Source: Chlorokybus atmophyticus
Taxonomy: Eukaryota; Plantae; Mesostigma and Chlorokybus algae
Direction: 5' to 3'
DNA length: 64,000 bases
NCBI GenBank assembly: GCA_009103225.1
Contig: RHPI01000732.1
Coordinates: 232,482-296,481 of the forward strand
In this document: positions 1-49,706 of the stretch, piece after piece
Numbering within the stretch: the stretch's first letter is position 1
Layout: every line of letters starts with the position of its first letter
Notes under the pieces: generated by a model
What the model was told of the DNA's origin: nothing
Seen by the model: only the letters and a program-made list of their open reading frames with translations
Database searches by the model: none
Translations under genes and position numbers: made by a program

Positions 1-1786
1 GGCAAAGAAGCATAGCGGGTCAGTGCTAAGTGGTTGGCCGGTGATGGGTGTGCAATGCATTGGATTGCCTGGCTATGAAGCTGAATTGCATGTGTGGTAG
101 TGTGTGGGATGGATCACGTGCAATGTCTGCATTCAGGGTAAACTCATCAACTGTTTGCCAATCAGACACATGCGCGTTGGAGCTTGCATTATACATCTTT
201 CTTCTGGAGAGCAGAGCAGTGTTGATGGGAAACGCCGCTATCCTCTTGCTAGCGTTGTAAAGACAGCACTGCTCGTAGAAGCTGCCAGGCAGCTGCAGCA
301 GTCACAGGTAATGCATGCGCGCCAATTCACATCTGTTGGAAGCAGTTCGTGCAATCATGAATGTTGCCAACCGACATGTATGCAGGCACGTGGATGGGGG
401 TTGTCATTGCGGACACCCATCACCATCACAGAGGATATCAAGTGCATTGGAGCAGGTACGTCGCATGCACAGTAATGTAGTATTTGCTGCTGCCAAGCGT
501 GCATAAGCTTGCATGCACTGTTTTTGACAAGGCAAGCCTTGGCTTGCAGGCAAATTGCAGAAGGCACGGCATGGCACTCCTATCACACTGGGCGAGTGCA
601 TAGAGTTGATGATTACGGTATCAGACAACACTGCCTCAGACCTTGTGCTGCGAGAAGTGCGCCTGCACAAAGTGCGACAGATGTGCAGAGACCTTGGCCT
701 GCACATGACAGACATCTACTTGTCCCAGCGTCAGGTATTGACAAAACAGTTGCATTGTTACAGAACTCATGCATGCTTGCATGTCAAGCTGTAAGCTGCT
801 TCTTTGTTCATGTTTTTGTGTGCATGCAGGCATATCTGGTAGCGCTTGGACGAGCCCCTGGGGCCAAGGGGCGCGGCTTCCTTGCGCGATGGCTGGGTAT
901 GTCTACAGGAGAGCGAATTGAGTTGGCAGAGGCTGCTGAGCGTGAGAACGCCGGGGTGCGCTTGAACGCTTTTCAGAACATGGAGAAGAACTCCTTCAAA
1001 GTCCAGAAGGTAGACACAGAAATGCGGAATGCAGGCATCTGTGATGCGCTTCCTATCTGCATGCATGATGTGAGCCTTAAACCTTCCATTGTTGCAGACC
1101 AGAAGTGCCACAGCACATCAGCATGACTTGGATTTGGTTGCTGCCATTGACAACCATGCATCTCCATACGATACGGCTCGCCTGCTGGAGCTTCTTGGAC
1201 AAAACAGGGTGCGTGGCCTCAACGGCGAGTGGAGCGAGTACTGCCTCGCTGTTCTTGGTCGCCAGAGGTAAGAGTGTGTTTGTGCTCACATAATGTGTGC
1301 CTATCAAAACCAAGCGTTATAGATATGGTTGTGCATGTTGGAGTCAGCCCTTGCCAACCGGGCAGTTGTGCAACAGGTATGGCAAGAGGAGGTTCTTGGC
1401 ACTGCTGCCAGCTGGTACTCCTATATACCACAAGACCGGCAGCATTTCTGGTGTGGTGAACGACGCAGGCATTATTGACATTGGATCGAAGGCGAATCGC
1501 GTGGCTGTGGCTGCCCTCATAAGCAATGTTCAGCATGTAAGCAGTTTCCTGAAGTTGTGCTTTGCATGTGCTTTACATTTGCACAGCAACAAACAACACG
1601 TATGATAATGCTGGGTAAACTTTTGCTGCGTTTACTGCTTTGACTGTCTAACATGGAGCTGCCCCTTTGTAGGGACGCGAAGCTGAGGCGGAGCAAGTCA
1701 TCGCAAGAATTGCCCGACTGGCATGGGAGGCTTACGCCCCGAGCCACCTGCGCGATGCACCCGCAGCATTTCCCATTGCAGCTTGA
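1..1786 (+). CDS. Class A serine beta-lactamase-fold / PBP-like serine hydrolase, spliced, 5' end outside window
   Basis: Phase-compatible GT-AG exons ~137/166-307, 561-734, 830-1009, 1098-1267, 1377-1536 and 1673-1786(TGA). They join RYPLASVVK (SxxK), ELMITVSDNTASD (SDN), IDNHASPYD and IYHKTGSISGVVNDAGII (KTG) in class A order. Confidence 0.88.
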
Positions 1787-2651
1787 ATTTGCAGCTGAAG
1801 CTGCAGCTGAAGTTCAAGTCCAAGTTTTGAGTAGCAAGCAGCAGGTCTCTGTGCGCTTTAAAGCGCAAGTCATCTGCTGCAGTTCGCCAGTTGACCTGCC
1901 GTGGTGGCCGGCGCGCAGGCTACCACCACGTACAGTTTTGTACCGTTGGTAGGGATGCGTTGCATTCAGTTGTGGGCTAGTGCAGGGTGGCATGTGTAGC
2001 ATTTCAACAACCCAGCGTTGTAAAGATCATCGAATACATGCTGACGTGAGGAGTTTCTCTGGTGTTCAACACGTTCACGATGGAAGTTGCGTGTGCCTGC
2101 TGAACAGCTTAGGCGAATACAGCACATGTTGGAGCACTGCAGCACAACTGCTTGAATCCAGGTTAGGCCTTAATAACGGCAAAGGCACGCAAGTACTTTG
2201 TCAAAGCAAGGCAGCAGACAGTGCATAGCAACTGAGTTAAATATACGCAATCGTCAGTGGCAAGCAAGCCCGTCGGCACTCTCACATATTTTCTCTTAGT
2301 GACTCCCTATCCCTACTTGACAGCTACCACTCATTGTGAGCTGTGCCTCATGCATCAACCTTGTCAGCAGTTGCCATAGGTCGCTGTGTCCGAAGCTGCC
2401 ATTGCATTTTGCTCACAGTCGCAAAGCCTATCGGCGCGTGAACTCCACAGCCATAGGCACTTCCCTAGCGATCGTACCTATGCTTGCCTACCTTGTGTGT
2501 TAAACAGAATGCATGGATTGTCAAGCAATTGGCCGCATTCTTGGAAGCTGGCCTACATCACAAAAACTACTTGCTGCACAGCACTACCAGCTTTTGATGT
2601 CGGTCCAATGCAACATCTCTGGCAAAGCAGTGTGCACGCAGAGCTGTGTCA

Positions 2652-5600
2652 TTATGAAGGCGTGAACGATGCTTTTGTCAGCAACTGGTCTACAGCAATG
2701 CAGCACTCACACGTCCTGGCAGCAAGCAACTCCTCATCATGGCGGTAATGGTTGATGCAATGATATACTCGTAGCTCCTCGTTACATTGCACAGACTTTC
2801 GCCGTCCCGGTTTTGTGGCCGTGTTAGCGGTTGCTGAGTCCACTCGGCACTTGCTGACAATGCTTCCTACCTGTCATCAGATCAGCATATCCGCCACACA
2901 CACAACTTCATACTCTCCTGTCAAGACCAAGACCGTCGTGACAACGTACCGGATTGCTCACACTTAAGTGGTTGGAGCAGAAGATATCATCACGCCCGAC
3001 TTCAAAGTTCTTGACGGCCGTCTCATTGATGCGGTAGTACCAACGCACCACCATGAGCGGTTCATCTCCCTCCATGTACAACTTTTCCAAGCGCGCGACA
3101 TAAGGCGTCGTCCCTTCATCAGGCTCCAGCTGCTTGCACAAAACCGTTACATGTTCATAGGCATGAAAGCAGACACAAAAATCACAAGGTAGTCCTTATA
3201 TAGCGATGCTTACCTCAATGTTGTTCCCAATCTCATAGCATTGGTTGTCATGGCTTATGGCCCTGTAGAACAACCTTCCGTACTTGTGCACGCCGCCACC
3301 AATCCAGCTCCAACTATCATTGCAGCTGTCACTGGCGGTGTTCGCTGCTGCTTTCCGCGTGGCCCCGCGCTTTGAGACCGGTTCATGTTGCCTGCCACTT
3401 GGGCCAGGTGCATCATCATCACAATCACTATCATTGTCACGGCCACGCTTATGTGTCACCCGGCCCGACTGCCTTCTCTTTGGCATGTGTCCGCCCTTGT
3501 GTTGTTGTGCCTGCGCGCCGGACTCCTCTTTGGCATCAGAAGCCGCGCGTGGGGCCGAATCCCTTTTCTTCGGTTCCGATGTGTGTCTCTCTTTTTTGCC
3601 TTTCACGCCGTCGCCAAGCTCGATCGTGTAAGGCAACGTGTCCACACGTCTTCCGGCGTGCAAAGACTCCACCAGCCAGTTCGACGTGACCACAGGCACG
3701 TCTAACGTGGCGGCGTGTTGGCGCACGAGGGGATGGAGCTTGTGGACATCCAGTTTGGCGTCGATCACGACAGCGTTGCAGGCGGGAGGGTTGTTCTCCA
3801 ACCGCGCGTGTATCTCAAGCTGCGTGATCTTCGCGCCGGCGTGTTTGACCACAAAAGGGAGATACTTCTGCCATGTGGGGGAACCTTTCACAAGCAGGTG
3901 CACGCCTTGAAACACCGGCGGGGAAGACGCAAGCGTGCCGCGCATCTGTAAGGACAGTATGCACGTAAACACAAGCATACGACAATGCAATTGAAAACAA
4001 GCACACACATAAGCATACAAAAGACCACAGACAAATATACACTAATAAAGCACATACGTGCGCACTCAACGCTCAACGCTCACACACGCCCACAATGTGT
4101 ACCTGCTGCGCACATGTTGTCCCGCTGCTCGGCTTGGACCTGTACTGTTGTACTGGCACCAACCTGCCCTTCGCCACGCACACATCGACCCAGGCGGGTT
4201 GCACCGGCGGCACGCCGAGCGCGTACCCGAGCAGGCACGGTGCCGAGCGGTCGTGTTGTTGGGCCGTCACGACCACGACGGACATGCAGCGGCCTTTCGC
4301 GCGCTCGCCCTGCTGCACGCGCACGTCCAACACGCAGCCAACCACAGAACCCTTCAGCTTGTGGATTATAGTGGCTAGCCTCTTCTTGTGCTCCTGCTGG
4401 TCGTCCCTAAAGCCGTCCAGCAGAAACTGCATGCCTGCAATGCCAACAAGCAGTGTGTGTGCTTGCGTAGGTAGGGCGCGTGCATGAGAAAGCATATGTC
4501 CATGCCCACACATCCGAGTGCGTGCATGCGTGTGTGCGTGTGCACGCATGTCTCCACATGCGGACCTGAGAACAACTCCGCAGCATTGCGCGGCTTCGTA
4601 GCCAATGCATCGCACATTGCTCGCTGTGGCGCAGCAGCTCGCGCGAGTTTGCTCGGCAGTTCTCTGCTACAGAGCTTCTCCGCTGCCGGCTTCTTTGTTA
4701 CCGGCCTTGCGGGCGCGTTGGCACCCTTTGTTGGTGGAACTGTTGCCTGGACTTCAACAGGCTTTCTGTTGGTTGGATTGAGCCTTGGCCTCGACGGCGC
4801 AGGCGTATCGTTTGGCGCTGGTGGCATTGCACGCGAGGCTGCACGCTGTTTTACCACTGCTGCAGCCATGCTCTCCTTCAAGCGCTTGCCAGCAGTCGCA
4901 TCTGCAAAGGACCAAAAACAACAAGTCTTCCACACGGACCGACTATCATCACACAACCCAACATACGCCTGTGACGCATGTATGCACACGCCCCCGCATG
5001 CATACCGCATGCATACCGTTGGCGTGGTCATTGACGCGGGTGCGCTTATGCCCCTTTTTCATAAAATCACAGCGCGCATCACCCTTTGCCGTCCGCCTCG
5101 CATCATCATCATCCACGCGTTGTCGCAGCATCGCCGCTCTAGCTATGCAATTCATGCCTTGCGCAAACTCCGCAGCCTTGCGCTTGGCCGGGCGGTTGCT
5201 GGGAACGTCGTGTCGATGCGGGACAACGTGCGGCGGGGAGGGCACCTTTGTTGCTCTGTTGGGCTTACTGGCGACGTGAGGCGCGGGCTCAACCTCGGAG
5301 CTTATAATGCGCGCGCAGGACTTGCGTCGCCTCACGTTCACCCACACGGGCTCGCTTGCACGGCCGCTGTCCGCCTCCATGCCTGCATCCTGCGTGAGAC
5401 TAACCCATGAGACACTTGCATAGTGCCAGAGAACCACTATGTGGGTATACATAACCTCACCATTGTCTCTGATGCAACTTTTGCAAACAGATTGCAAAAA
5501 GCTTGTCTGAAACTGAAGCAATACCAACGCTGCATGTGTGCATATGTGTATGTTGCTGTTATGTGTGCCTGCAGCGTGCAACAGACTAATGGATGAGACC

Positions 5601-9945: not shown

Positions 9946-11683
9946 ATGGCGTCGTCAAGGGTGATGGGATCATCACCAAGCTGCGTGTTGGTGTTAATGT
10001 TACTGGTCTGCTCTGTAGCTGTGGATGCGCTGAAGCTCGAGCCGTACATTCCCAGCCTGTTCAGCGGTTCCGGCGTGACCAGGCCGCTGCTGAAGGGGCA
10101 GAAGCCTCCCAAGGGCGGCGATAAGAAGGCCAAGGAGGAGTACATGAGGGAGATTGTGTGCAGCGACGAGCTCAAGAACAAGGCAGCCGCCGTCGACCAG
10201 TGCTTTGGAACGGGCAAAGACTGGGTCAGGGAGTGCCCTGGAAACACCGCACATGAAGCGGACTTTGACACCACATCAGTCCTCACTGGAGGGCCGACAG
10301 GTATGATTAATTGTCGTCGTCGTCTGCGTCGTCATTGCTGTCGTGGATGCTTTTTGTTGTTACTGTTGCAGTTGCTGCTGCTGCTGCCGTTGCATTTGTT
10401 GCTGTTTCTGTCTTGTACTTTTGTTGTTTTGGTTGTCAACTGACTTGTCGTTGTTACAATGCAAAGGCAATGGTCGCTGCAGTATCTGTCGATGTAAGTC
10501 AGAAGGCATCACTAGCACATGCCTGCATGTAACTGTGCACCAACTTGTGTCAAAGCTAAGTCAAACTACGTCAGAGCTAGTGCTGGGTAACAGTAGTAGA
10601 GGGCGAGTATGAGGTTGACACATGCGCAATGCACTTACACCACTATGTAACAGGGTGTACAGAGGCGTGGGCGACGGTGGTTGCGGATGACGTGTACCTT
10701 CCTGGAGCGTTAGTGTTGGTGCACACGCTGAGGAGGCACAGCACGAACGCGCGCGACATCATTGTGATAGCGTCCTCGAGGGTGTCAAAGGCCACATTGG
10801 ACGCGCTGGCAAAAGAGTGCGTGATAGTAATCGTGTCAGACCCGTCGAGCAACGCGCAGGCGACCGATCTCGCTGCCGTCAATGCCCGATATCAATCTGG
10901 CTACTGGCTTCTGAAGATGTTAGTGTGGAGGTTGAGGGAGTACTCCCGCGTGGTGTACCTTGACGCCGATATCTACGTCCGTCAGGACGCAGACGCCCTC
11001 TTCTGCACGGATATCTCCCCAACCACACCAATATCCGTCACGCCGCGCTCGGCCACGGAGGCCGCATCGGGCTTCAACGCGGGGATGTTTGTCTTCGCTC
11101 CAAGCAACATCGAGTTCCGAGCTATTCTTACAAGCTTTGAGGCGCTGAGCGAGAGCGAGCTCGCAGCCACGACCGAGCAAGACTTTCTCAACAAGCACTT
11201 CAAGGGGAGGTATATACACAAAAACAGCAAAGCTCCTTGTGCCATGCACAGCATGTTAACACAGAAAAACACACACATGCTCTCACTCATTCACACTCAC
11301 ATCACCGTACTCACAGGTATAGTGTCGTACCTTTGGACTTCATAATGAAGCATCGGCGCATGGTGAGGACTCCCGAGGCATGGGACCTCGCCCGCGTCAA
11401 GGGGTACCACATGAACGGGGCGCCCAAGCCGTGGAACCCCACGTGGCGGACGGCGTGCGCGTACCCGGGAGGACACGGGAAGCGCGTGCGTGACTACGAG
11501 GCCTTCTTCGTAGAGTGGTGGTACTACTACTACGACATGCTTGGTGAGGTTCTCCCCCTCGACACCGCCCAATTCAAGCTCCGGCCCGAACACGACCCCA
11601 CACGGTCGTGGGAAACGTGGAATGAGGATGAGTTTGTAAGGACACGTTGCCAAGGCTCTGCTGATGAGCGCAGGCGCAGATGA
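9946..11683 (+). CDS. Glycosyltransferase family 8 (glycogenin/PGSIP-like) with N-terminal signal or anchor
   Basis: Exons 9946-10300, 10654-11209 and 11317-11683. Motifs: AWATVVADDVYLPGALVL, YLDADIYV (DxD), FNAGMFVFAPS, EQDFLN and HMNGAPKPW. The N-terminus is hydrophobic (VLVLMLLVCSVAVDA). Confidence 0.9.
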
Positions 11684-17261: not shown

Positions 17262-19121
17262 TTGGCAGTCATGGCGGTGGCGGCGGCGGCTGTGGTCAGC
17301 CGTGCGGCATTGGGTGTCGGTTTGGAGGGGATCTTGCCTGTGAAGCTGTCGTCGCGCAGGCGGCGGGCAGGTAAAGCATGCGTCATGTCGCCGGCCAGGG
17401 CGGTGCTGGAGGCTTCTCGCCCGGCGGAGGAGCAGCAGCTTGATGCTGCCAGTTCGGAGGCGGCGGTGCGGGAGCTTCGGGAGGAGCGTGACAGGCGGGC
17501 GGCTGCCCTGGCTGCAGCCGAGGCTGCCCTCCGCGCTGTAGAGCGGCAGATGACTCCCCGCAACGCCTACCTACCGCCTGACGGCCGGCCATGCGACTAC
17601 GGGTTCAATTCCGCCACAGTCGGTGTCTACACGGACGACGCCGTCCCGTCCGCCGTGCCTGAGAACGTCTTTAGGCTGGCATGGAAGAACTTCAGCCGCG
17701 AGCTGCGTGCCCTTCGCAAGGCCTTGGACCCTGCTCAGTGCGAGGTGAGTCACCATGACCTGACTTGACGTCACGTCTTTTCATCGTTATGCTTTGGGTT
17801 GTGGTTTTGAAGTTGCTGCTCTTCAGCAAGACGTAGAGTTGGAAACGCTTTACACACCAACAGTAACCACTCGGCTTGCCTGCAAAGTGCTGAATATCCC
17901 AAGCATTGAATTTTGTCACATGTCAAGAACTGCACAGCAGTCGAAAACATGCACTGCCATAATTATGAAGTTGTTAGTTGTGTGGGTAACGTCATGGGTG
18001 CTCAGTATGGGCTGTTCATCGCAGTCAGTTAGTTATCAACCAAGAACTGTATTATGTAGTGCTACTACTGCAGCAGCTGGCATGCCTTGCACAGTACGAG
18101 TGTTGTTTCCATGACTTCCAAGTCGTTACTTTTGCATACTGCCATCAGTTGTTGTTCGTGTTATTGGGTGTTTGTTACTTTTTTGTAAACAACTTGCTCA
18201 GACGTTGCTGCGCAGGTGGACGACCCTCTCGACCCTGATCTTTGCTCCATCAGCGGCGATGCCATGCGTTGCGCCTCGCTTCGCGCAGAATTGGAGACTT
18301 TGACACTGAACGATAAGGCTGTATGGCAGCGGGAGCAGACACGCACTCCCATCAAAGCGCCACCGATCATCAAGATCCCATACCTCATGTTGTGCTGGGC
18401 TCTGGACCTGCTCTACAACGGGAAACCCATCCAACGCTTTTGGGTGCTGGAGACCGTGGCGCGCATACCATACTTCAGCTACATCTCCATGCTGCACTTG
18501 TACGAGACGCTCGGGTGGTGGCGTGTTGGCGCGGCAGTAAAGCGTGTCCACTTTGCTGAGGAGTGGAATGAGTTCCATCACCTGCTCATCATGGAGTCTC
18601 TCGGGGGAGACCAGCTTTGGAAGGATCGTTTCTTCGCCCAACATGCTGCTGTTTTCTACTTTTGGGTGTTGGGCACGCTGTGGCTGGTGTCTCCCAGCCT
18701 CGCATACAACTTCAGCGAGATTGTGGAGGCCCACGCTTTCAGTACGTACGCACAGTTTGTGGAGGAGAACGCGGAGAAACTGAAGACCCTCCCTGCTCCG
18801 GAGATTGCGCGCAAGTACTACCTTGCTGAAGACATATACATGTTTGATGAGTTCCAGACTTCGATCGCGCCGGGGACACGTCGACCCTCCATGGCGTCTC
18901 TCTATGACGTATTCTGCAACATTCGTGACGATGAGGCCGAGCATGTTAAGACGATGGTGGCTTGTCAAGACAATGCTAAGGTTGTGCAAAGTCCGCACAC
19001 GGCCGCGGCAGTTGGTGTTCCCGCACTGGCTTCAAAAGCAGTCGCAGCCGCCAAGCCCGTGCCTGAAAGCATACTGGCCTCTGTGCAGACAGCTCTTGAG
19101 CGTGTGCCCAGATGGTTTTGA
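17262..19121 (+). CDS. PTOX: Plastid terminal oxidase (alternative oxidase family diiron protein)
   Basis: Exons 17262-17744 and 18216-19121. Ala/Ser/Arg-rich transit peptide, then RFWVLETVARIPYFSYISMLHLYETLGWWR, HFAEEWNEFHHLLIMESLGG, EIVEAHA and IRDDEAEH. Confidence 0.93.
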
Positions 19122-34589: not shown

Positions 34590-38375
<3,786 letters not shown>

Positions 38376-39269
38376 TCAGCAGGCAGCACGAAGATTTGGT
38401 ATGGTAGCTTTCTATATATGTAAAGTATGTAGTGCTTTTTCAGAGTTGGTGGGGTTGCTATTCTTCATGCAGCATTTCGGTTTTGTGGTAAGGTACAACA
38501 AAAACGGGGGAGGGGCAAGGGGAAAGAGGGAGAGGGAGTGTAGGTGTTTGTATGTGCCATAGCAGTAGGGTTGAACGCTTCATGGGCATTATCAGTGTAG
38601 TTGCAGTCTGTGCATGTGCATGTGCAAACCCTTGCAGAATTCGATGCTGTTTTACCGCGTGCTAGCAGTACTTATATTTCTGTTGATACAGAGAGAGACC
38701 CGTTGCTAGTTGGTATGGTCAGGCATGACACGTGTGTATGTGCTTGCAATTGTTGTGGACAGAGATACAGCAATAGTGTGTGTACAGGGTGCTGTATCAT
38801 ATGCTCACAGCGTGTTGCATGCGCACTCAGTTGGTGTGTGCGCATGCGCAAGCGCAAGTAAGCAAGTGAAAGCGAGAGTGATATTCATGGCATGCGTACA
38901 CAGTTTGTGATCAGTCCTTTGAACATGAACCACCATGAAGACGCAAACGATCTTTACTGTTTTGCGTAAACAAATGATAGAGCAACACTCATTTAGAAAG
39001 TGTGTATGTGATCATTACTCTTACAGATACAACACTTTATTAAGGGTGTGAGGCAAAGCTTGTTCGATGGGGTATGTTAATGTTCATATCGTTTTAGATT
39101 TGCCATGGCATCAAAGAGCAACTAAAAAGGGTTTTAGGTTGTTATAAGTGTGCATGCTTACTAGATGTTAACATCAAGAACTTAACAAGCGCTTAAATGA
39201 ATGGTCTCAACATGTGATGAATGCTTGTGTTGATGTTCTAAACAGTGTTGAGAGAAGGGTGTGTGGGGG

Positions 39270-39451
39270 NNNNNNNNNNNNNNNNNNNNNNNNNNNNNNN
39301 NNNNNNNNNNNNNNNNNNNNNNNNNNNNNNNNNNNNNNNNNNNNNNNNNNNNNNNNNNNNNNNNNNNNNNNNNNNNNNNNNNNNNNNNNNNNNNNNNNNN
39401 NNNNNNNNNNNNNNNNNNNNNNNNNNNNNNNNNNNNNNNNNNNNNNNNNNN
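39270..39451. other. Assembly gap (N run) flanked by G runs
   Basis: 182 N. Confidence 1.
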
Positions 39452-41499
39452 GGGGGGTCAACAAAGCAGCAGGTATGAACTCTATCGCTAGTTATGTACA
39501 ATCAAATGCATGGGGTTGAATTTAAGACGAAAAAAACTGAAAGGTCAGGAGGGAGTATTCAAAAAGTCAACCTGCATTCATTGTTCGCTCATGAGTAAAT
39601 TCTGCTTTGCTTACATATGGTATTTATTCCATTACAATCCCCATGGGACTCCAATTGAGTAAATACGGTATACATACTTTTCAGGTACATGATTCGAAGC
39701 CAAGCCGTGGATTTATATATAATAATATTGTATATATAATATTGACGGACTTGCCACAAATGGGGTTTACCCCATGTTTAATTTCATTATCAGTGGATAT
39801 ACATTCATACATGTTGTTGCAATTAAGGGGACATCAATGATGCAATGAGTGGTTGCGTAATAACAGAGTCGACATTACCAGTCATTGTGTGAACAGACAA
39901 GCATGGCAACAAAGTCAATAAGTTCACACATGTTCTTGTAAGATCTTATTATCATTATGTTCTTGCAAGCGCGTACTGCGTTCAAGATCCTAATACTTCA
40001 TCTTGGTGATGGCAGCGTGACGCGTTACAACATGCATGCGATTGTGCACAACTGTCACATATGGCAAGCAATGCTTAAGAAATGTGCGCCACCGGTCAAG
40101 CGCAACATATGTGGTTAAAGGACCAATGACTGATAATATGTTACTATGATAATCAGCTCGCTCATGATCCTTTCACGCTAAAAATCTTACCACGCTTCTT
40201 ACTGCAGCATCGCTCCGGCTATTGTCGGAAGCCTTGCGATAAGCTTTTCATGCAGCACGCACTCAGCTAGAGCATTCGTGCAAACATATTTACACAATCT
40301 TTATTGACTCAATTAGACAACTCAGCAACTATCAGCATGACTTGAAAATTAAAATAGCTTTACGAGGGAAAACAGCTTATTGCACTTCATTCATATGCAC
40401 TTTATTGACTTTGACAAGAGAAGAGGCTCGAAAATAAACACAAGCACTGCGAAAAGGCTGCAGGTCATATGCAATTGCATCGCTCATATTATAATAAAAG
40501 TAATGCAACTATTCACCAGTTTTAGGTCACGACTGACATTGCCAAAACATTACCGTATTTTATTGAACACAACCCCCTCCTTAGCACAATACCCCAATTG
40601 TTTTTTGGCGGTTTGGGGAGGGGGNNGGGGGGGGGGGGGGGCTTTGTTTGAACCCCCATTACACTCAATGTGGTACCCTAACACGACACCCCCATAGATT
40701 TAGCAGGGCGAGGGGGGAAAGGCTTTACTTGTAAAAGAGGCTTGTATTTGACAAAAGTACCAAGAGACGTTATAATCAATGCGAACATGACTGCTTTTAA
40801 CTACCGTGCATCGTCCTTGATAGTACGAAATTGCATGCGCCAATTGTCAATTTTATTCCAAGGAATGCAGTGTGCTCATAGACGCACGGCAAACAACACT
40901 AGCCATGTACCAACAGCGCGTAATCCTTACATGGAAATTGACACATGGCGCATGTGGTTGCATACTATTGAGTCCAATGCATGGTAGTTGAGACCACTCG
41001 CGTCGGTCTCGCGGTGATGCCACTCGTGATCCCTAGATTCGACATAAGGAATACATCTATCTGACATGCAGTCTTCAACAACAATTGGCTGCCTACAAGC
41101 AGAAGTCAACATCAATGTTGACAAGAAGGCAAGATTTGCGCTAGTGGAACCAGCATAGTCATCATCCAGCTTGTCAGCACATTGGCCAGACATGCAAGCT
41201 AGCTGCGTGATGGCAAGGCAAGACATGCGTTGCTGAGTACGTGCAGCACTTTTTCAGGAGAGCAAGCTGCGCCATGGCAATGCAGGCATGCTGTCGAGTA
41301 CATGCAGCATGTAACGATATGAAGAAAGTATGCAGTGAACAACAGCTGAACCAAATAGCATAAAGCGTGCATGCAGGTAGAGCAGTACAGCTTACTAATC
41401 AGGCATGGCAGCCTGCTTGCAAGCAGGCATGCTGCGCATTGCATGCAGCAAAGCCAGGAGAAAGCATGCAGTACAATGCATGTAGAGCACTGTATGCTC

Positions 41500-46653: not shown

Positions 46654-49600
46654 TCACAATATACACACAAAACACATGTGTATACAAATGGTACATATGG
46701 CACACATGCAAACATACCGGAAGGCGGGTCTGTGGCTGGTGACTCCGGTCTTCCATAGGTTGAAAGCATCTCCAAAGTCCATTGACTGGATGTCTGGTCC
46801 GTCGAGGGCGATGCGTAGCCTATCATCAAGTGCGCGTATGGACAGCTGCGAGCGCAGTGAGTCCCTGATGCTCTGCTGCTTGATGTGTCCGAGCTCGCAG
46901 AGGGAGGTGCTTATCGGCTGCACCATCGCGATGTGGCCGAGCGTGATGAAGTTGGGGTACATGTCCGAGTACTCGTCCGACGCGGTCAAAATGCGCCACG
47001 TGTCCGCCATGCCGCGACCCGAGAACTGAGTGGCCATCTGCTCCTTGAACTGAGGCCACTCGCGCCGGCAACCATCCGCGTCCACAAGCGCGGGGTGCAC
47101 AGCCCCCGAAGTGAACCGGTCTTGCCCAAAAGCTGCAGCCAACAGATAGTATCAACGTGCACGCACAATAGGCCAGTCATACGGTTGCATGAACCAGACA
47201 GGACTCGGTGCAAACTGAGGTCTTACAACAGTGTATCATGCATGCAGGTACACAGTATGCCACTATTGTGTGCCTTCACACAAAACAAATCTTATATACA
47301 TGGCACAACAATACAACACAACGCCATTTGACACGCGTCAATGAGATGCGGCACTGACCTGTTAGGAGTGCTTCAAGTTCATCTCTACCGAACCCGTGCA
47401 GGTCTTCTAGCGACGGGTACATCTTGGGCACCAGTACTCGCATGGCCGAGAACAGCTCTCGCTGAGGGAAGCGCTCATGCAGGTTGTCCACGACAGCCGC
47501 GGCAAACTCGCGTACAAATGAGAGACAGACAGCATGGTCATCCTCGCCAGCATACCTGTAATGTGAACATGTTGATAAGTACCCAAGGGTAAGCAACTAC
47601 AACAGCATGAATCGGTCACAAAGCACACTCACCACAACAAACTTTGTTAATCAATGGCATACTGTGGTACAACAAAGTAGAACCACTCACCTGACCGAGT
47701 GATCGTGAAACATGCCTCCCGAGCTTTCAATCATGTCCAAGAACTCTCGCAAGTAGCCCCCTTCTGGCCCCAAGGTGGGTGTTTCAATGAGGTACTCCTC
47801 GCGTATGCAACCCATCACGCTTGTGATGGTGTGCTCCACCGTAGCCAAGCTCGCGCTCTCACTCTGGAACGTGCGGCTCAAGCGCGACAACCTGCCGAGG
47901 ATGTCCGACAAGTAATGTATGGCAAAAAGGAAAGTGTACGACTGAAGACGCTCGTGCAGCGCCGGATCGTCTGGCTCAAGCAAAGGTAGCACCTGCAAGT
48001 ACAGACATGTAAGCATGAGGGCACCGGCAAGGCATGGCCACACATGATAGTAATCAAGGTGACTTTCACTTATGTTACCTGTGTGTGTGTGTGGTCATCA
48101 ATAGGTGCATGATACCTCATGTAGACATTTCCGCAGGCTGTTGATGCAGTTGTGTCGGGCCAGCCACTGTACGCTACTGGATTTCTGCAAATTGAGGACC
48201 GAGCCGCCCACTTCTTCTTGCAAGAAGTTGAGCATCTCATATCGCTTCGGGGCGCATACCAGCCACGCGAACAGCGCGCTTATTTCCGCATCAATCGACT
48301 TAGCGAAATTCGTATTTGCGGCATTGGATGCGCCGACAGCCACTCTGGTTCCGGCACAATGCGTGACTATGAGGAACGGATTCAGCCGCTGAAGCAAGCT
48401 CGAGGCACCGTACTCCGGTTGAGACACAATGGGAGCGCCATCAGAGCTCAAACCTACAAGCTTCAAAAGGTCCAAGCCAATCCGTTGCAGAAGCCCGATG
48501 ATAGCAGCTTGCAGGCCTTCTGCGCTGAATTCATCAACCTGTACAGAAGAAATGATAAACACGCCATGTTGTTGGTATACGCCAGAGTGCAACAGGTGTC
48601 TCCTATCACAGAATGCCAACATACACATCATGTGCAACAACACGTTGTACGTAACACTGTCGCATACACTAGACGCTAACCTGCAACAAGCAGAGGTACT
48701 TGCACTGGGCTTGCCCATCGCCAGTGACGTACGTGCAGTACACGACAAAGTAATCTGCTGTGGATGCATCCTGCGTCTCATCCACGATGATGCCGTAGAA
48801 GGGACTGGCGCGCAGCTCCCGACACGTACGGTCCCACAAACTGTCGCTGATGCAGTGTATTAGCCTGCTGCATGATGACGCGTCTGAGGTGATATCCGCA
48901 GGGACGTCTCGGATGCCCATCGTGCGCATGAGCGGCATGACGGCGGCGTAATTATCGGTGGGCAGGTCCGCTTTCGCAATGAAGTATGCTATGCGGAACG
49001 AGTTGAAGGTCGAGTGCTTGGACATCTCTGCAGCGGCCTTCTTCGTGGTGGGTTCGGCGAACATCGGCTCGGGGATCCCAAACTCGAGCCCACTTCCTCC
49101 CCGTGCACGATTGGTTGCAGCGTGCCTGGCGGTCTCGGCTGCGACGGCTTCCTGCCTCACCGCAGCCATCGCCAAGTCCACATCACGTTGGCGCTGTGCC
49201 GATGCCTCTGAGGACAACACCTCCTGGTGGACTTTGGAGGTCTGGTGCTCCACGAGTGCGCTGTGGCGCATGTTGCCCCCGCCGTCCTTGGCGTACTTGG
49301 TGTTCTTGTTGTACTTCAAGCAGAGCGCGCAGAAGATCTTCCCGTTGCGAAGACGCACCCACGGGAACGTCTTTGCCCATGCTGTGAGAAATGCTCTCTT
49401 AGCCGACGGGCTCGCGCCTTCGGGTAAGTCCCCTCCCGCAGAGGTGGCTTCGCGCCCGCGCTTCCTCCCTACCCGCTGCAGCGGTCGCTCAGACAGGGGT
49501 CTGTCCTCGTCATCCTCCTCGTCCTCCATCTCCTGCGCCTCCTCCAGCTGCGTGTGTGGCATCAGTTGCGGCTGCGCCATCATCGTCTGCGCGTACGCCA

Positions 49601-49706
49601 TTGGAGGCAGCTGCGGGTCTGGCCGGTGCAGGTCGGCCCGCTGCAGCAGAGTCCCCAGCGCGGGTGCAAACGCAGGGTGGTGCGGTAGTGTGTGCTGCAT
49701 GTTCAT
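46654..49706 (-). CDS. hAT transposase-derived ZNF862-like protein (TTF-type zinc finger, DUF4371-like core, hAT dimerisation domain), spliced
   Basis: Exons ~49706-48681, 48538-48116, 47992-47691, 47555-47359 and 47132-46718. Motifs: WAKTFPW..KIFCALC..HQTSKVH, YGIIVDETQDAS, LSSDGA and YPNFITLGHIAMVQPISTSLCELG. Both ends are uncertain. Confidence 0.85.

What the first reader, a model, noticed from the sequence alone, without database searches (positions are those of the whole stretch)
1..1786. Intron-containing class A beta-lactamase-fold gene in an algal nuclear genome
SxxK, SDN and KTG are intact and in class A order, spread over at least six spliceosomal exons, so this is a genuine host gene and not bacterial contamination. 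This fold is essentially bacterial. Several streptophytes keep plastid peptidoglycan with nuclear Mur/PBP genes (established). The gene may therefore be an endosymbiotic or horizontally acquired plastid-wall enzyme, or a defence or antibiotic-handling enzyme (inference).
Basis: partly seen in the sequence, partly recalled or inferred. Interest (0 to 1): 0.75.

Follow-up and report, generated by a model that had tools for sequence, protein, structure and literature searches.

The report
Algal lactamase-fold gene of bacterial origin
A real, spliced and expressed nuclear gene of the green alga Chlorokybus encodes a bacterial-type enzyme built like a class A beta-lactamase but lacking that enzyme's key water-activating residue. 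Relatives in other early-branching green algae suggest one ancient transfer from non-cyanobacterial bacteria; its substrate is unknown.

Summary
Window 1-1786 (+) holds the last 18 nt of one exon plus seven complete GT-AG exons. They splice into residues 177-521 of a 521-aa protein, Chlorokybus atmophyticus Chrsp91S08184. Intron-free contigs from three public runs remove exactly the six internal introns. A 97%-identical allele differs at 18 synonymous and 3 non-synonymous sites.

The protein matches Pfam PF13354 (131 bits). SVVK, SDN and KTG are intact. The AlphaFold model (pLDDT 96) superposes on PBP-A, LRA-5 and 4EWF.

It is not a canonical class A beta-lactamase:
- It scores 99.9 bits against NCBIfam's 200-bit cut-off.
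- Gln stands at the Glu166 position.
- The start of the omega loop is replaced by a conserved helical insert of about 65-80 aa. Exon 4 is part of this insert.

Orthologs exist in Mesostigma, Klebsormidium, Mesotaenium and Prasinoderma. They form one clade (100/96) whose branching follows the species tree. The clade is nested in an uncharacterised bacterial subfamily (Xenobia/Eremiobacterota, Armatimonadota). A cyanobacterial PBP-A origin is disfavoured (AU p 0.018).

A penicillin-binding DD-peptidase-like role, perhaps on plastid peptidoglycan, is inference only. The scan noted this same stretch before, in the overlapping window, not on other DNA.

The parts
1..18 (+). last 18 nt of an upstream coding exon (codes ..AKKHSG; the final Gly codon is split, phase 2)
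   Evidence: The loose end of the transcript contigs joins window 1-17 to 165/166. It matches P0001 residues 177-182.
19..165 (+). intron (GT..AG), phase 2; same position and phase as an intron of the Klebsormidium nitens ortholog
166..307 (+). exon with the nucleophile motif SVVK (Ser 251-253, Lys 260-262)
308..385 (+). intron, 78 nt, GT..AG
   Evidence: skipped in the contigs of X1 and X3
386..455 (+). exon with the subfamily motif KCIGAG
456..549 (+). intron, 94 nt, GT..AG
550..734 (+). exon with SDN (621-629) and, at 726-728, the Gln that aligns with Ambler position 166; invariant Arg at 729-731
735..829 (+). intron, 95 nt, phase 0 after ..SQRQ; the same position is used in a second alga's genomic contig (L082)
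830..1009 (+). exon 4: 60 aa of the helical insert that replaces the start of the omega loop. It matches neither Pfam nor PDB but is conserved in the bacterial subfamily (invariant Glu at 983-985).
   Evidence: All four listed allele differences in this exon are synonymous.
1010..1097 (+). intron, 88 nt, GT..AG
   Evidence: skipped in the contigs of X1, X2 and X3
1098..1267 (+). exon: end of the insert (conserved Asp-Asn at 1149-1154) and the helix that follows
1268..1376 (+). intron, 109 nt, GT..AG
1377..1536 (+). exon with HKTG (1429-1440) and the beta-3/beta-4 strands
1537..1672 (+). intron, 136 nt, phase 0; probably shared with Klebsormidium nitens
1673..1786 (+). last coding exon (C-terminal helix) with the TGA stop at 1784-1786
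1787..2069 (+). 3' untranslated region, as far as the transcript contig reaches
   Evidence: The X1 contig covers 1673-2069. The X3 allele has small deletions here.

Best explanation
Window 1-1786 holds the 3' two-thirds of a nuclear, spliced and expressed gene of Chlorokybus atmophyticus (Chrsp91S08184, 521 aa). A non-conserved 176-aa N-terminal extension replaces the signal peptide seen in bacterial relatives. The rest is a serine acyl-hydrolase domain with the class A beta-lactamase / PBP-A fold.

Shown: the domain belongs to an uncharacterised, mostly bacterial subfamily of PF13354. In this subfamily the first half of the omega loop is replaced by a conserved helical insert of about 65-80 aa, and Ambler position 166 holds Asn or Gln instead of the catalytic Glu. 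The gene entered the green lineage once, from a non-cyanobacterial donor. It has since been inherited vertically (Prasinoderma, Mesostigma, Chlorokybus, Klebsormidium, Mesotaenium), has gained introns, and is under purifying selection.

Inferred mechanism: Ser211 (SVVK), helped by Lys214 and Ser277 (SDN), is acylated by a substrate whose carboxylate is held by His449-Lys450-Thr451-Gly452. Without Glu166 and Asn170 there is no class A deacylating water. Beta-lactams would therefore be bound rather than turned over, as in PBP-A and wild-type LRA-5. The most likely natural reaction is a DD-peptidase-type cleavage of a D-Ala-D-Ala-like terminus. Plastid peptidoglycan stem peptides are the obvious candidate substrate, because these algae keep the peptidoglycan pathway.
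For: Gene and expression:
- GT-AG exons give an open spliced frame.
- Intron-free contigs from three runs skip the six internal introns exactly.
- A 97% allele differs at 18 synonymous versus 3 non-synonymous sites.
- Neighbouring genes are eukaryotic: BRCT+BAH, AOX, GT8.

Identity:
- An exon-3 search returned the 521-aa protein at 100% identity.
- It is named Chlorokybus Chrsp91S08184.
- The spliced window protein equals residues 177-521.

Fold:
- PF13354 at 131 bits.
- AlphaFold pLDDT 96, pTM 0.94.
- Foldseek finds 4EWF, PBP-A and LRA-5 with target TM 0.83-0.85.
- A family profile hits PBP-A (242 bits) and LRA-5 (239 bits) best. Each is hit in two stretches that leave about 65 profile positions unmatched.

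No Glu166:
- The engineered Glu of both PBP-A L158E and LRA-5 V166E aligns with the residue before the invariant Arg. That residue is Gln here and Asn in the bacteria.
- None of 195 collected proteins has a correctly spaced ExxLN.
- NCBIfam bla_class_A scores 99.9 bits against a cut-off of 200.
- LRA-5 without Glu166 is essentially inactive (PMC12777564). PBP-A is a DD-carboxy/endopeptidase (PMC11189452).

Evolution:
- The six eukaryotic sequences form one clade (100/96). Prasinoderma is sister to the streptophytes, and Chlorokybus groups with Mesostigma (100/97). The clade sits inside a 55-row clade (49 bacterial rows plus the 6 eukaryotic ones) supported 99/94.
- The closest named relatives are Xenobia, Eremiobacterota, Vulcanimicrobiota and Armatimonadota.
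- Intron positions are shared with Klebsormidium and with a second alga.
- The Prasinoderma genome paper reports that Prasinoderma and all streptophyte algae keep all ten core peptidoglycan genes (PMC7455551).
Against: - No activity, substrate or localisation was tested.
- The N-terminal extensions differ in length and sequence. Chlorokybus and Prasinoderma are basic and poor in acidic residues, but Klebsormidium is acidic (17% Asp+Glu), so plastid targeting is open.
- The family was not found in bryophytes, ferns, Micromonas or glaucophytes, which also keep plastid peptidoglycan. The co-occurrence with peptidoglycan is therefore only partial.
- Close structural relatives occur in wall-less Thermoplasmatota archaea, seemingly without signal peptides. 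The subfamily's substrate therefore need not be the organism's own peptidoglycan.
- An invariant Glu inside the insert (Glu366) could supply a base from another direction.
- The donor lineage is unresolved (polytomy), and many relatives are metagenome bins with uncertain labels.
Confidence: 0.5

Rival explanations
1. The protein is a serine hydrolase that acts on something other than peptidoglycan (an ester, an amide or a D-aminoacyl compound) in the cytosol or another compartment. The lactamase fold is only the scaffold.
For: - Homologs with the same insert-bearing structure are common in wall-less Thermoplasmatota and appear to lack signal peptides.
- The Klebsormidium ortholog has an acidic N-terminus.
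- The family was not detected in several peptidoglycan-keeping plants and algae.
- Bacterial gene neighbourhoods show no cell-wall genes.
Against: - The full penicillin-binding motif set (SxxK, SDN, HKTG) is invariant.
- The nearest characterised protein is a DD-peptidase (PMC11189452).
- Most bacterial members carry signal peptides, which places them beside the wall.
Confidence: 0.3
2. The protein is a working beta-lactamase that protects the alga, or its plastid wall synthesis, from beta-lactams made by neighbouring microbes.
For: It has the class A fold and all three acylation motifs. Many relatives are labelled 'beta-lactamase class A' by automatic annotation.
Against: - Gln stands at position 166 and Tyr at 170, so there is no ExxLN.
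- The NCBIfam class A model scores only half of its cut-off.
- The closest solved relatives without Glu166 have negligible turnover (PMC12777564).
- No secretion signal is present.
Confidence: 0.1
3. The gene came from the cyanobacterial ancestor of the plastid and is the ortholog of cyanobacterial PBP-A.
For: PBP-A is the best-scoring solved structure. The gene seems as old as green plants. Its carriers keep plastid peptidoglycan (PMC7455551).
Against: - PBP-A and the Calothrix PBP-A-type protein lack the insert and lie far away in the tree.
- No cyanobacterium is among the 80 best loci from 185,579 species genomes.
- Holding the algal clade together with the Calothrix sequence costs 29.7 log-likelihood units, AU p 0.018.
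Confidence: 0.07
4. The gene is bacterial contamination of the assembly, or a dead pseudogene.
For: None beyond the bacterial look of the protein.
Against: - There are seven GT-AG introns, and spliced transcripts appear in three runs.
- The flanking genes are eukaryotic.
- Substitutions are strongly biased toward synonymous sites.
- Orthologs with introns exist in Klebsormidium and another alga.
Confidence: 0.01

Closest known systems
PBP-A of Thermosynechococcus elongatus (Tll2115; PDB 2J7V, 2J8Y, 2J9O)
   Same: Best profile match among solved structures (242 bits) and the same fold (target TM 0.84-0.85). SxxK, SDN and KTG are present. There is no Glu at position 166. It is a penicillin-binding DD-carboxy/endopeptidase (PMC11189452).
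   Different: PBP-A bridges the omega-loop region with about 5 residues, where the algal protein has a helical insert of about 65-80 aa. Identity is only 20-21% in the Foldseek structural alignment. It lies in a different, distant branch, and uniting the algal clade with a cyanobacterial PBP-A-type sequence (Calothrix P0124) is rejected.
LRA-5, soil-metagenome class A beta-lactamase 'precursor' (PDB 8EO5)
   Same: Second-best profile match (239 bits). It has an atypical omega loop, lacks Glu166 and shows negligible beta-lactam turnover (PMC12777564).
   Different: LRA-5 has Val at 166 and no long insert. It is bacterial and secreted, and 23-24% identical in the Foldseek structural alignment.
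Canonical Ambler class A beta-lactamases (TEM, CTX-M, PER, BlaZ)
   Same: Overall fold and the three acylation motifs in the same order.
   Different: There is no Glu166 or Asn170, and the omega loop is rebuilt. NCBIfam bla_class_A scores 99.9 bits against a 200-bit cut-off.
Uncharacterised bacterial 'serine hydrolase' subfamily of PF13354 (e.g. MBM3461874.1 from Armatimonadota; Candidatus Xenobia AMXMBFR33_22690)
   Same: 40-46% identical over the whole domain. They share the same insert and the same invariant residues: Arg after position 166, Glu in the insert, Asp-Asn at the return, and HKTG. The algal clade is nested among them.
   Different: The bacterial proteins carry a signal peptide, have Asn rather than Gln at position 166 and have no introns. 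The algal proteins have long non-conserved N-terminal extensions.

Membership tests
Pfam PF13354 Beta-lactamase2 (class A beta-lactamase-related serine hydrolases) | Match to the family model above its gathering score | tested here: met
   131.3 bits against a cut-off of 22, over residues 189-478 and profile 3-213. Single exons match collinearly.
Pfam PF13354 Beta-lactamase2 (class A beta-lactamase-related serine hydrolases) | SxxK, SDN and KTG motifs in this order | tested here: met
   SVVK at window 251-262, SDN at 621-629, KTG at 1432-1440. All are invariant or nearly so in 75 relatives.
Pfam PF13354 Beta-lactamase2 (class A beta-lactamase-related serine hydrolases) | Two-domain class A / PBP fold | tested here: met
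   Model pLDDT 96. Foldseek E 1e-17 to 1e-15 and target TM 0.83-0.85 to 4EWF, 2J7V and 8EO5.
Ambler class A beta-lactamase in the strict sense | Glu166 (with Asn170) on the omega loop to activate the deacylating water | tested here: not met
   The column that holds the engineered Glu of PBP-A L158E and LRA-5 V166E holds Gln here (window 726-728). Position 170 is Tyr. No correctly spaced ExxLN exists in any collected protein.
Ambler class A beta-lactamase in the strict sense | Score above NCBIfam NF033103 (bla_class_A equivalog) curated cut-off | tested here: not met
   99.9 bits against a cut-off of 200.
Ambler class A beta-lactamase in the strict sense | Catalytic turnover of beta-lactams | not testable with these tools
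   Needs enzyme kinetics.
Cyanobacterial PBP-A family | Membership of the cyanobacterial PBP-A clade | tested here: not met
   The Calothrix PBP-A-type sequence lies far from the algal clade. AU test p 0.018 against uniting them. No cyanobacteria are among the best 80 GTDB loci.
Cyanobacterial PBP-A family | Short omega-loop region without a catalytic Glu | tested here: inconclusive
   The absence of Glu is shared. The short loop is not: about 65 profile positions have no counterpart in PBP-A.
Cyanobacterial PBP-A family | DD-carboxypeptidase/endopeptidase activity and penicillin binding | not testable with these tools
   Needs biochemical assays.
Plastid peptidoglycan machinery of green plants | Plastid targeting | tested here: inconclusive
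   No signal peptide is present. The Chlorokybus and Prasinoderma extensions are basic and Ala/Ser-rich, the Klebsormidium one is acidic, and none is conserved. No targeting predictor was available.
Plastid peptidoglycan machinery of green plants | Occurs together with the Mur/PBP gene set | tested here: inconclusive
   All identified carriers belong to groups that PMC7455551 reports as keeping the ten core genes. The gene was not found in bryophytes, ferns, Micromonas or glaucophytes, which keep them too.

The most novel reading that the evidence does not exclude
The protein is a so far overlooked low-molecular-weight penicillin-binding peptidase of the plastid wall. In this reading it was acquired from non-cyanobacterial bacteria by the ancestor of green plants, is kept only in Prasinoderma and streptophyte algae, and trims or opens plastid peptidoglycan. 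Its helical insert, in place of the omega loop, would shape substrate choice. It would be a hydrolytic member of the plastid peptidoglycan toolkit with a different ancestry from the Mur/PBP genes, and a further beta-lactam target in these algae.
Probability: 0.22. Interest if true: 0.7.

Novelty: new variant of a known kind. Interest (0 to 1): 0.45.

Why it matters
Class A-fold penicillin-recognising enzymes are regarded as bacterial. This work shows one conserved, under selection, in the nuclear genomes of the earliest-branching green lineages, in a pattern that fits a single transfer near the origin of green plants.

It gives a concrete candidate to test for plastid peptidoglycan remodelling. 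No algal hydrolase of this type turned up for that process in the papers I searched.

It also points to a large, uncharacterised prokaryotic subfamily in which the catalytic omega loop of class A enzymes is replaced by a helical subdomain. [quoted passage not shown]

If the protein turns out to be an ordinary hydrolase with another substrate, the finding is a well-documented ancient gene transfer and little more.

Tried and rejected
- The spliced protein could not be handed to the tools by reference, so I searched exon by exon. An exon-3 search of the representative library then returned the full-length protein, which I used afterwards.
- Exon 5 alone against PDB gave only chance matches to complement factor H.
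- Gene neighbourhoods of five bacterial relatives showed an LRR protein, a PAS histidine kinase and a SIS-domain protein. None is conserved or linked to the wall.
- Literature searches for this family in Chlorokybus, Klebsormidium, streptophytes or algae found nothing relevant.
- The peptidoglycan review PMC10784329 does not mention such an enzyme.
- A search of earlier scan notes for peptidoglycan genes in this genome gave only a LysM protein.
- Rejected: contamination, because of introns, transcripts and eukaryotic neighbours.
- Rejected: exon 4 as a lineage-specific or spurious exon. It is shared with the bacterial subfamily, folds with high confidence and changes only synonymously between alleles.

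Full report
**The observation**

Reading window 1-3000 and splicing at anchored GT..AG sites gives an uninterrupted frame that ends in TGA at 1784-1786.
- Contigs of three public runs were laid on window 1-2400. The runs are listed as probable RNA.
- A 2331-nt contig of run X1 is 100% identical. A 2354-nt contig of X3 is about 97% identical. Both skip 308-385, 456-549, 735-829, 1010-1097, 1268-1376 and 1537-1672, each with GT..AG ends.
- A 293-nt contig of X2 skips two of these introns.
- The same contigs join window 1-17 to 165/166. The first in-window acceptor therefore lies at 165/166, and an eighth exon ends at 18.
- The transcript continues about 1 kb upstream of the window and about 280 nt past the stop, to 2069.
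- Of 21 listed coding differences between the window and the X3 allele, 18 are synonymous. That includes all four in exon 4.

**What the gene is**

- Exon by exon, Pfam PF13354 is matched collinearly: profile 3-41, 64-117, 119-167 (this one weak, E 0.21) and 172-213. Exon 4 is unmatched.
- The PDB matches of single exons are BlaZ-type enzymes, LRA-5 and Tll2115.
- A search of 1.84 billion representative proteins with exon 3 returned a 521-aa protein at 100% identity.
- That protein is Chlorokybus atmophyticus Chrsp91S08184, and it contains the spliced window protein exactly at residues 177-521.
- As a whole it scores 131 bits on PF13354.
- The window's other genes are eukaryotic: a BRCT+BAH gene, an alternative oxidase, a GT8 glycosyltransferase and a C17orf113-type zinc finger.
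- Contamination and pseudogene readings are therefore excluded.

**Structure and active site**

- An AlphaFold model built on 75 relatives has pLDDT 96 and pTM 0.94.
- Foldseek places it on 4EWF, PBP-A (2J7V) and LRA-5 (8EO5). The target TM is 0.83-0.85 but the query TM only about 0.65, because part of the model has no counterpart.
- A family profile hits PBP-A (242 bits) and LRA-5 (239 bits) best. Each is hit in two stretches (profile 14/17-157/162 and 226/227-336/337), leaving about 65 positions unmatched.
- In the model these unmatched positions are five helices, domain residues 136-215.
- In the same alignments, the Glu engineered into PBP-A (L158E) and into LRA-5 (V166E) falls in one column: the residue before an invariant Arg. 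I identified the LRA-5 position through its Phe169, as described in PMC12777564.
- That column holds Asn in the bacterial relatives and Gln in Chlorokybus (window 726-728) and in the other green-algal orthologs that cover this position. Position 170 is Tyr.
- None of the 195 collected proteins has a correctly spaced ExxLN.
- NCBIfam's class A equivalog model scores 99.9 bits against its 200-bit cut-off.
- The protein therefore has the acylation machinery of penicillin-recognising enzymes but not the class A deacylation device.
- From my own knowledge: class A enzymes with Glu166 replaced by Asn or Gln accumulate the acyl-enzyme.
- From papers: LRA-5 without Glu166 has negligible turnover (PMC12777564), and PBP-A is a DD-carboxy/endopeptidase (PMC11189452).

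**The subfamily**

- Exon 4 is not a lineage-specific oddity. The insert is shared, with invariant residues, by a set of prokaryotic proteins that are 40-46% identical over the whole domain.
- The invariant residues are the Arg after position 166, a Glu in the insert (Glu366 here), and an invariant Asn preceded by a nearly invariant Asp where the chain returns.
- Named members come from Candidatus Xenobia, Eremiobacterota/Vulcanimicrobiota, Armatimonadota and bins labelled Burkholderiales. More distant members come from Thermoplasmatota archaea.
- The nearest ESM Atlas structure cluster (TM 0.88 over 323 residues) is half archaeal.
- Bacterial members carry signal peptides and the eukaryotic ones do not.
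- No member appears to be characterised. Bacterial gene neighbourhoods gave no hint of function.

**Evolution**

- Orthologs were found in Mesostigma viride, Mesotaenium endlicherianum, Klebsormidium nitens (GAQ81613.1) and Prasinoderma coloniale (PRCOL_00000916).
- The Prasinoderma gene lies on TARA scaffolds beside NSA2, a WD40 protein and a phosphodiesterase.
- Two further orthologs come from unidentified sources: one transcript contig and one intron-bearing genomic contig.
- In a careful maximum-likelihood tree, the six eukaryotic rows form one clade (100/96). Prasinoderma is sister to the streptophytes, and Chlorokybus groups with Mesostigma (100/97). This mirrors the species tree.
- The clade lies inside a 55-row clade (49 bacterial rows plus the 6 eukaryotic ones) supported 99/94. 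Its exact sister is unresolved there. A first tree with fewer eukaryotes placed it beside a Vulcanimicrobiota-rich group (97/93).
- Prasinoderma is a long, compositionally odd branch, so its place deserves caution.
- No cyanobacterium is among the best 80 loci from 185,579 species genomes.
- Forcing the algal clade together with a Calothrix PBP-A-type sequence costs 29.7 log-likelihood units (AU p 0.018). The group was chosen after the tree had been seen.
- Intron positions support long residence in the nucleus:
  - The phase-2 intron before the M-R/H-V-G strand is identical in Chlorokybus and Klebsormidium.
  - The last intron probably is too.
  - The phase-0 intron after SQRQ is shared with the unidentified genomic contig.
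  - Other introns differ.
- No homolog turned up in land plants, core chlorophytes, Micromonas, red algae or glaucophytes. Those searches score only the 8000 candidates sharing most words, so absence is provisional.

**Function**

Only inference is possible. The carriers belong to lineages said to keep all ten core peptidoglycan genes (PMC7455551), and the nearest characterised protein trims peptidoglycan. A plastid DD-peptidase is therefore the leading idea.

Several points count against it:
- The N-terminal extensions are not conserved, and only some look like transit peptides.
- Several peptidoglycan-keeping lineages lack the gene.
- Wall-less archaea have close structural relatives.

I put about 0.5 on a penicillin-binding, DD-peptidase-like enzyme, with the plastid wall as its likely but unproven substrate. 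I put 0.3 on another substrate and 0.1 on a true lactamase.

**Novelty**

- The gene models exist in public annotations, as 'hypothetical protein' or as an automatic domain name.
- I found no paper on this family in algae.
- The kind is known: class A-related serine hydrolases lacking Glu166.
- The insert-bearing subfamily and its conserved presence in green-algal nuclei are not described.
- Earlier first-stage notes on this same stretch, read in the overlapping window, had already flagged the missing general base. My alignments agree with that.

Noticed in passing
window 2321-4430 (- strand): A convergent neighbour gene with BRCT (ORF 3196-4017) and BAH (ORF 2908-3138) domains. A 4198-nt transcript contig of run X1 ends at about 2321, so the two genes' 3' ends lie only about 250 nt apart.
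   Followed up: partly
window 18216-19118 (+): A long exon matches Pfam AOX (alternative oxidase / plastid terminal oxidase family), E 5e-29.
   Followed up: no
window 48669-49703 (-): An ORF of 344 aa carries a C17orf113-type zinc finger (E 1.8e-13).
   Followed up: no
window 10629-11342 (+): An exon matches glycosyltransferase family 8 (E 7e-17).
   Followed up: no
window 38001-40000: G+C drops to 0.395, against about 0.50-0.57 in the rest of the window.
   Followed up: no
window 165-2051, run X3: A second transcript allele, about 97% identical, has small deletions in the 3' UTR (6 nt at 1799, 1 nt at 1885, 3 nt at 1945). It comes from a different strain, cryptic species or haplotype of the same coded organism.
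   Followed up: partly
L083 6001-7305 and L084 226-1530 (TARA Oceans scaffolds): The Prasinoderma coloniale ortholog is intronless and lies on a 70% G+C scaffold beside NSA2, a WD40 protein and a phosphodiesterase. The same protein occurs in several ocean metagenomes.
   Followed up: partly
L011 and L012 (Thermoplasmata archaeon bins): Archaeal homologs of the insert-bearing subfamily have no obvious signal peptide, in organisms usually described as wall-less.
   Followed up: no
L006 and L008 (goat rumen and human gut bins): Gut and rumen members of the subfamily are each followed by a SIS-domain gene. The organisms are unnamed.
   Followed up: no
L085 4001-8463 (Klebsormidium nitens DF237034.1): The Klebsormidium ortholog has nine introns, one of them inside the Gly codon of KTG. 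Its first three annotated exons are tiny (13, 20 and 41 aa) and code an acidic N-terminus, so the annotated start may be wrong.
   Followed up: partly
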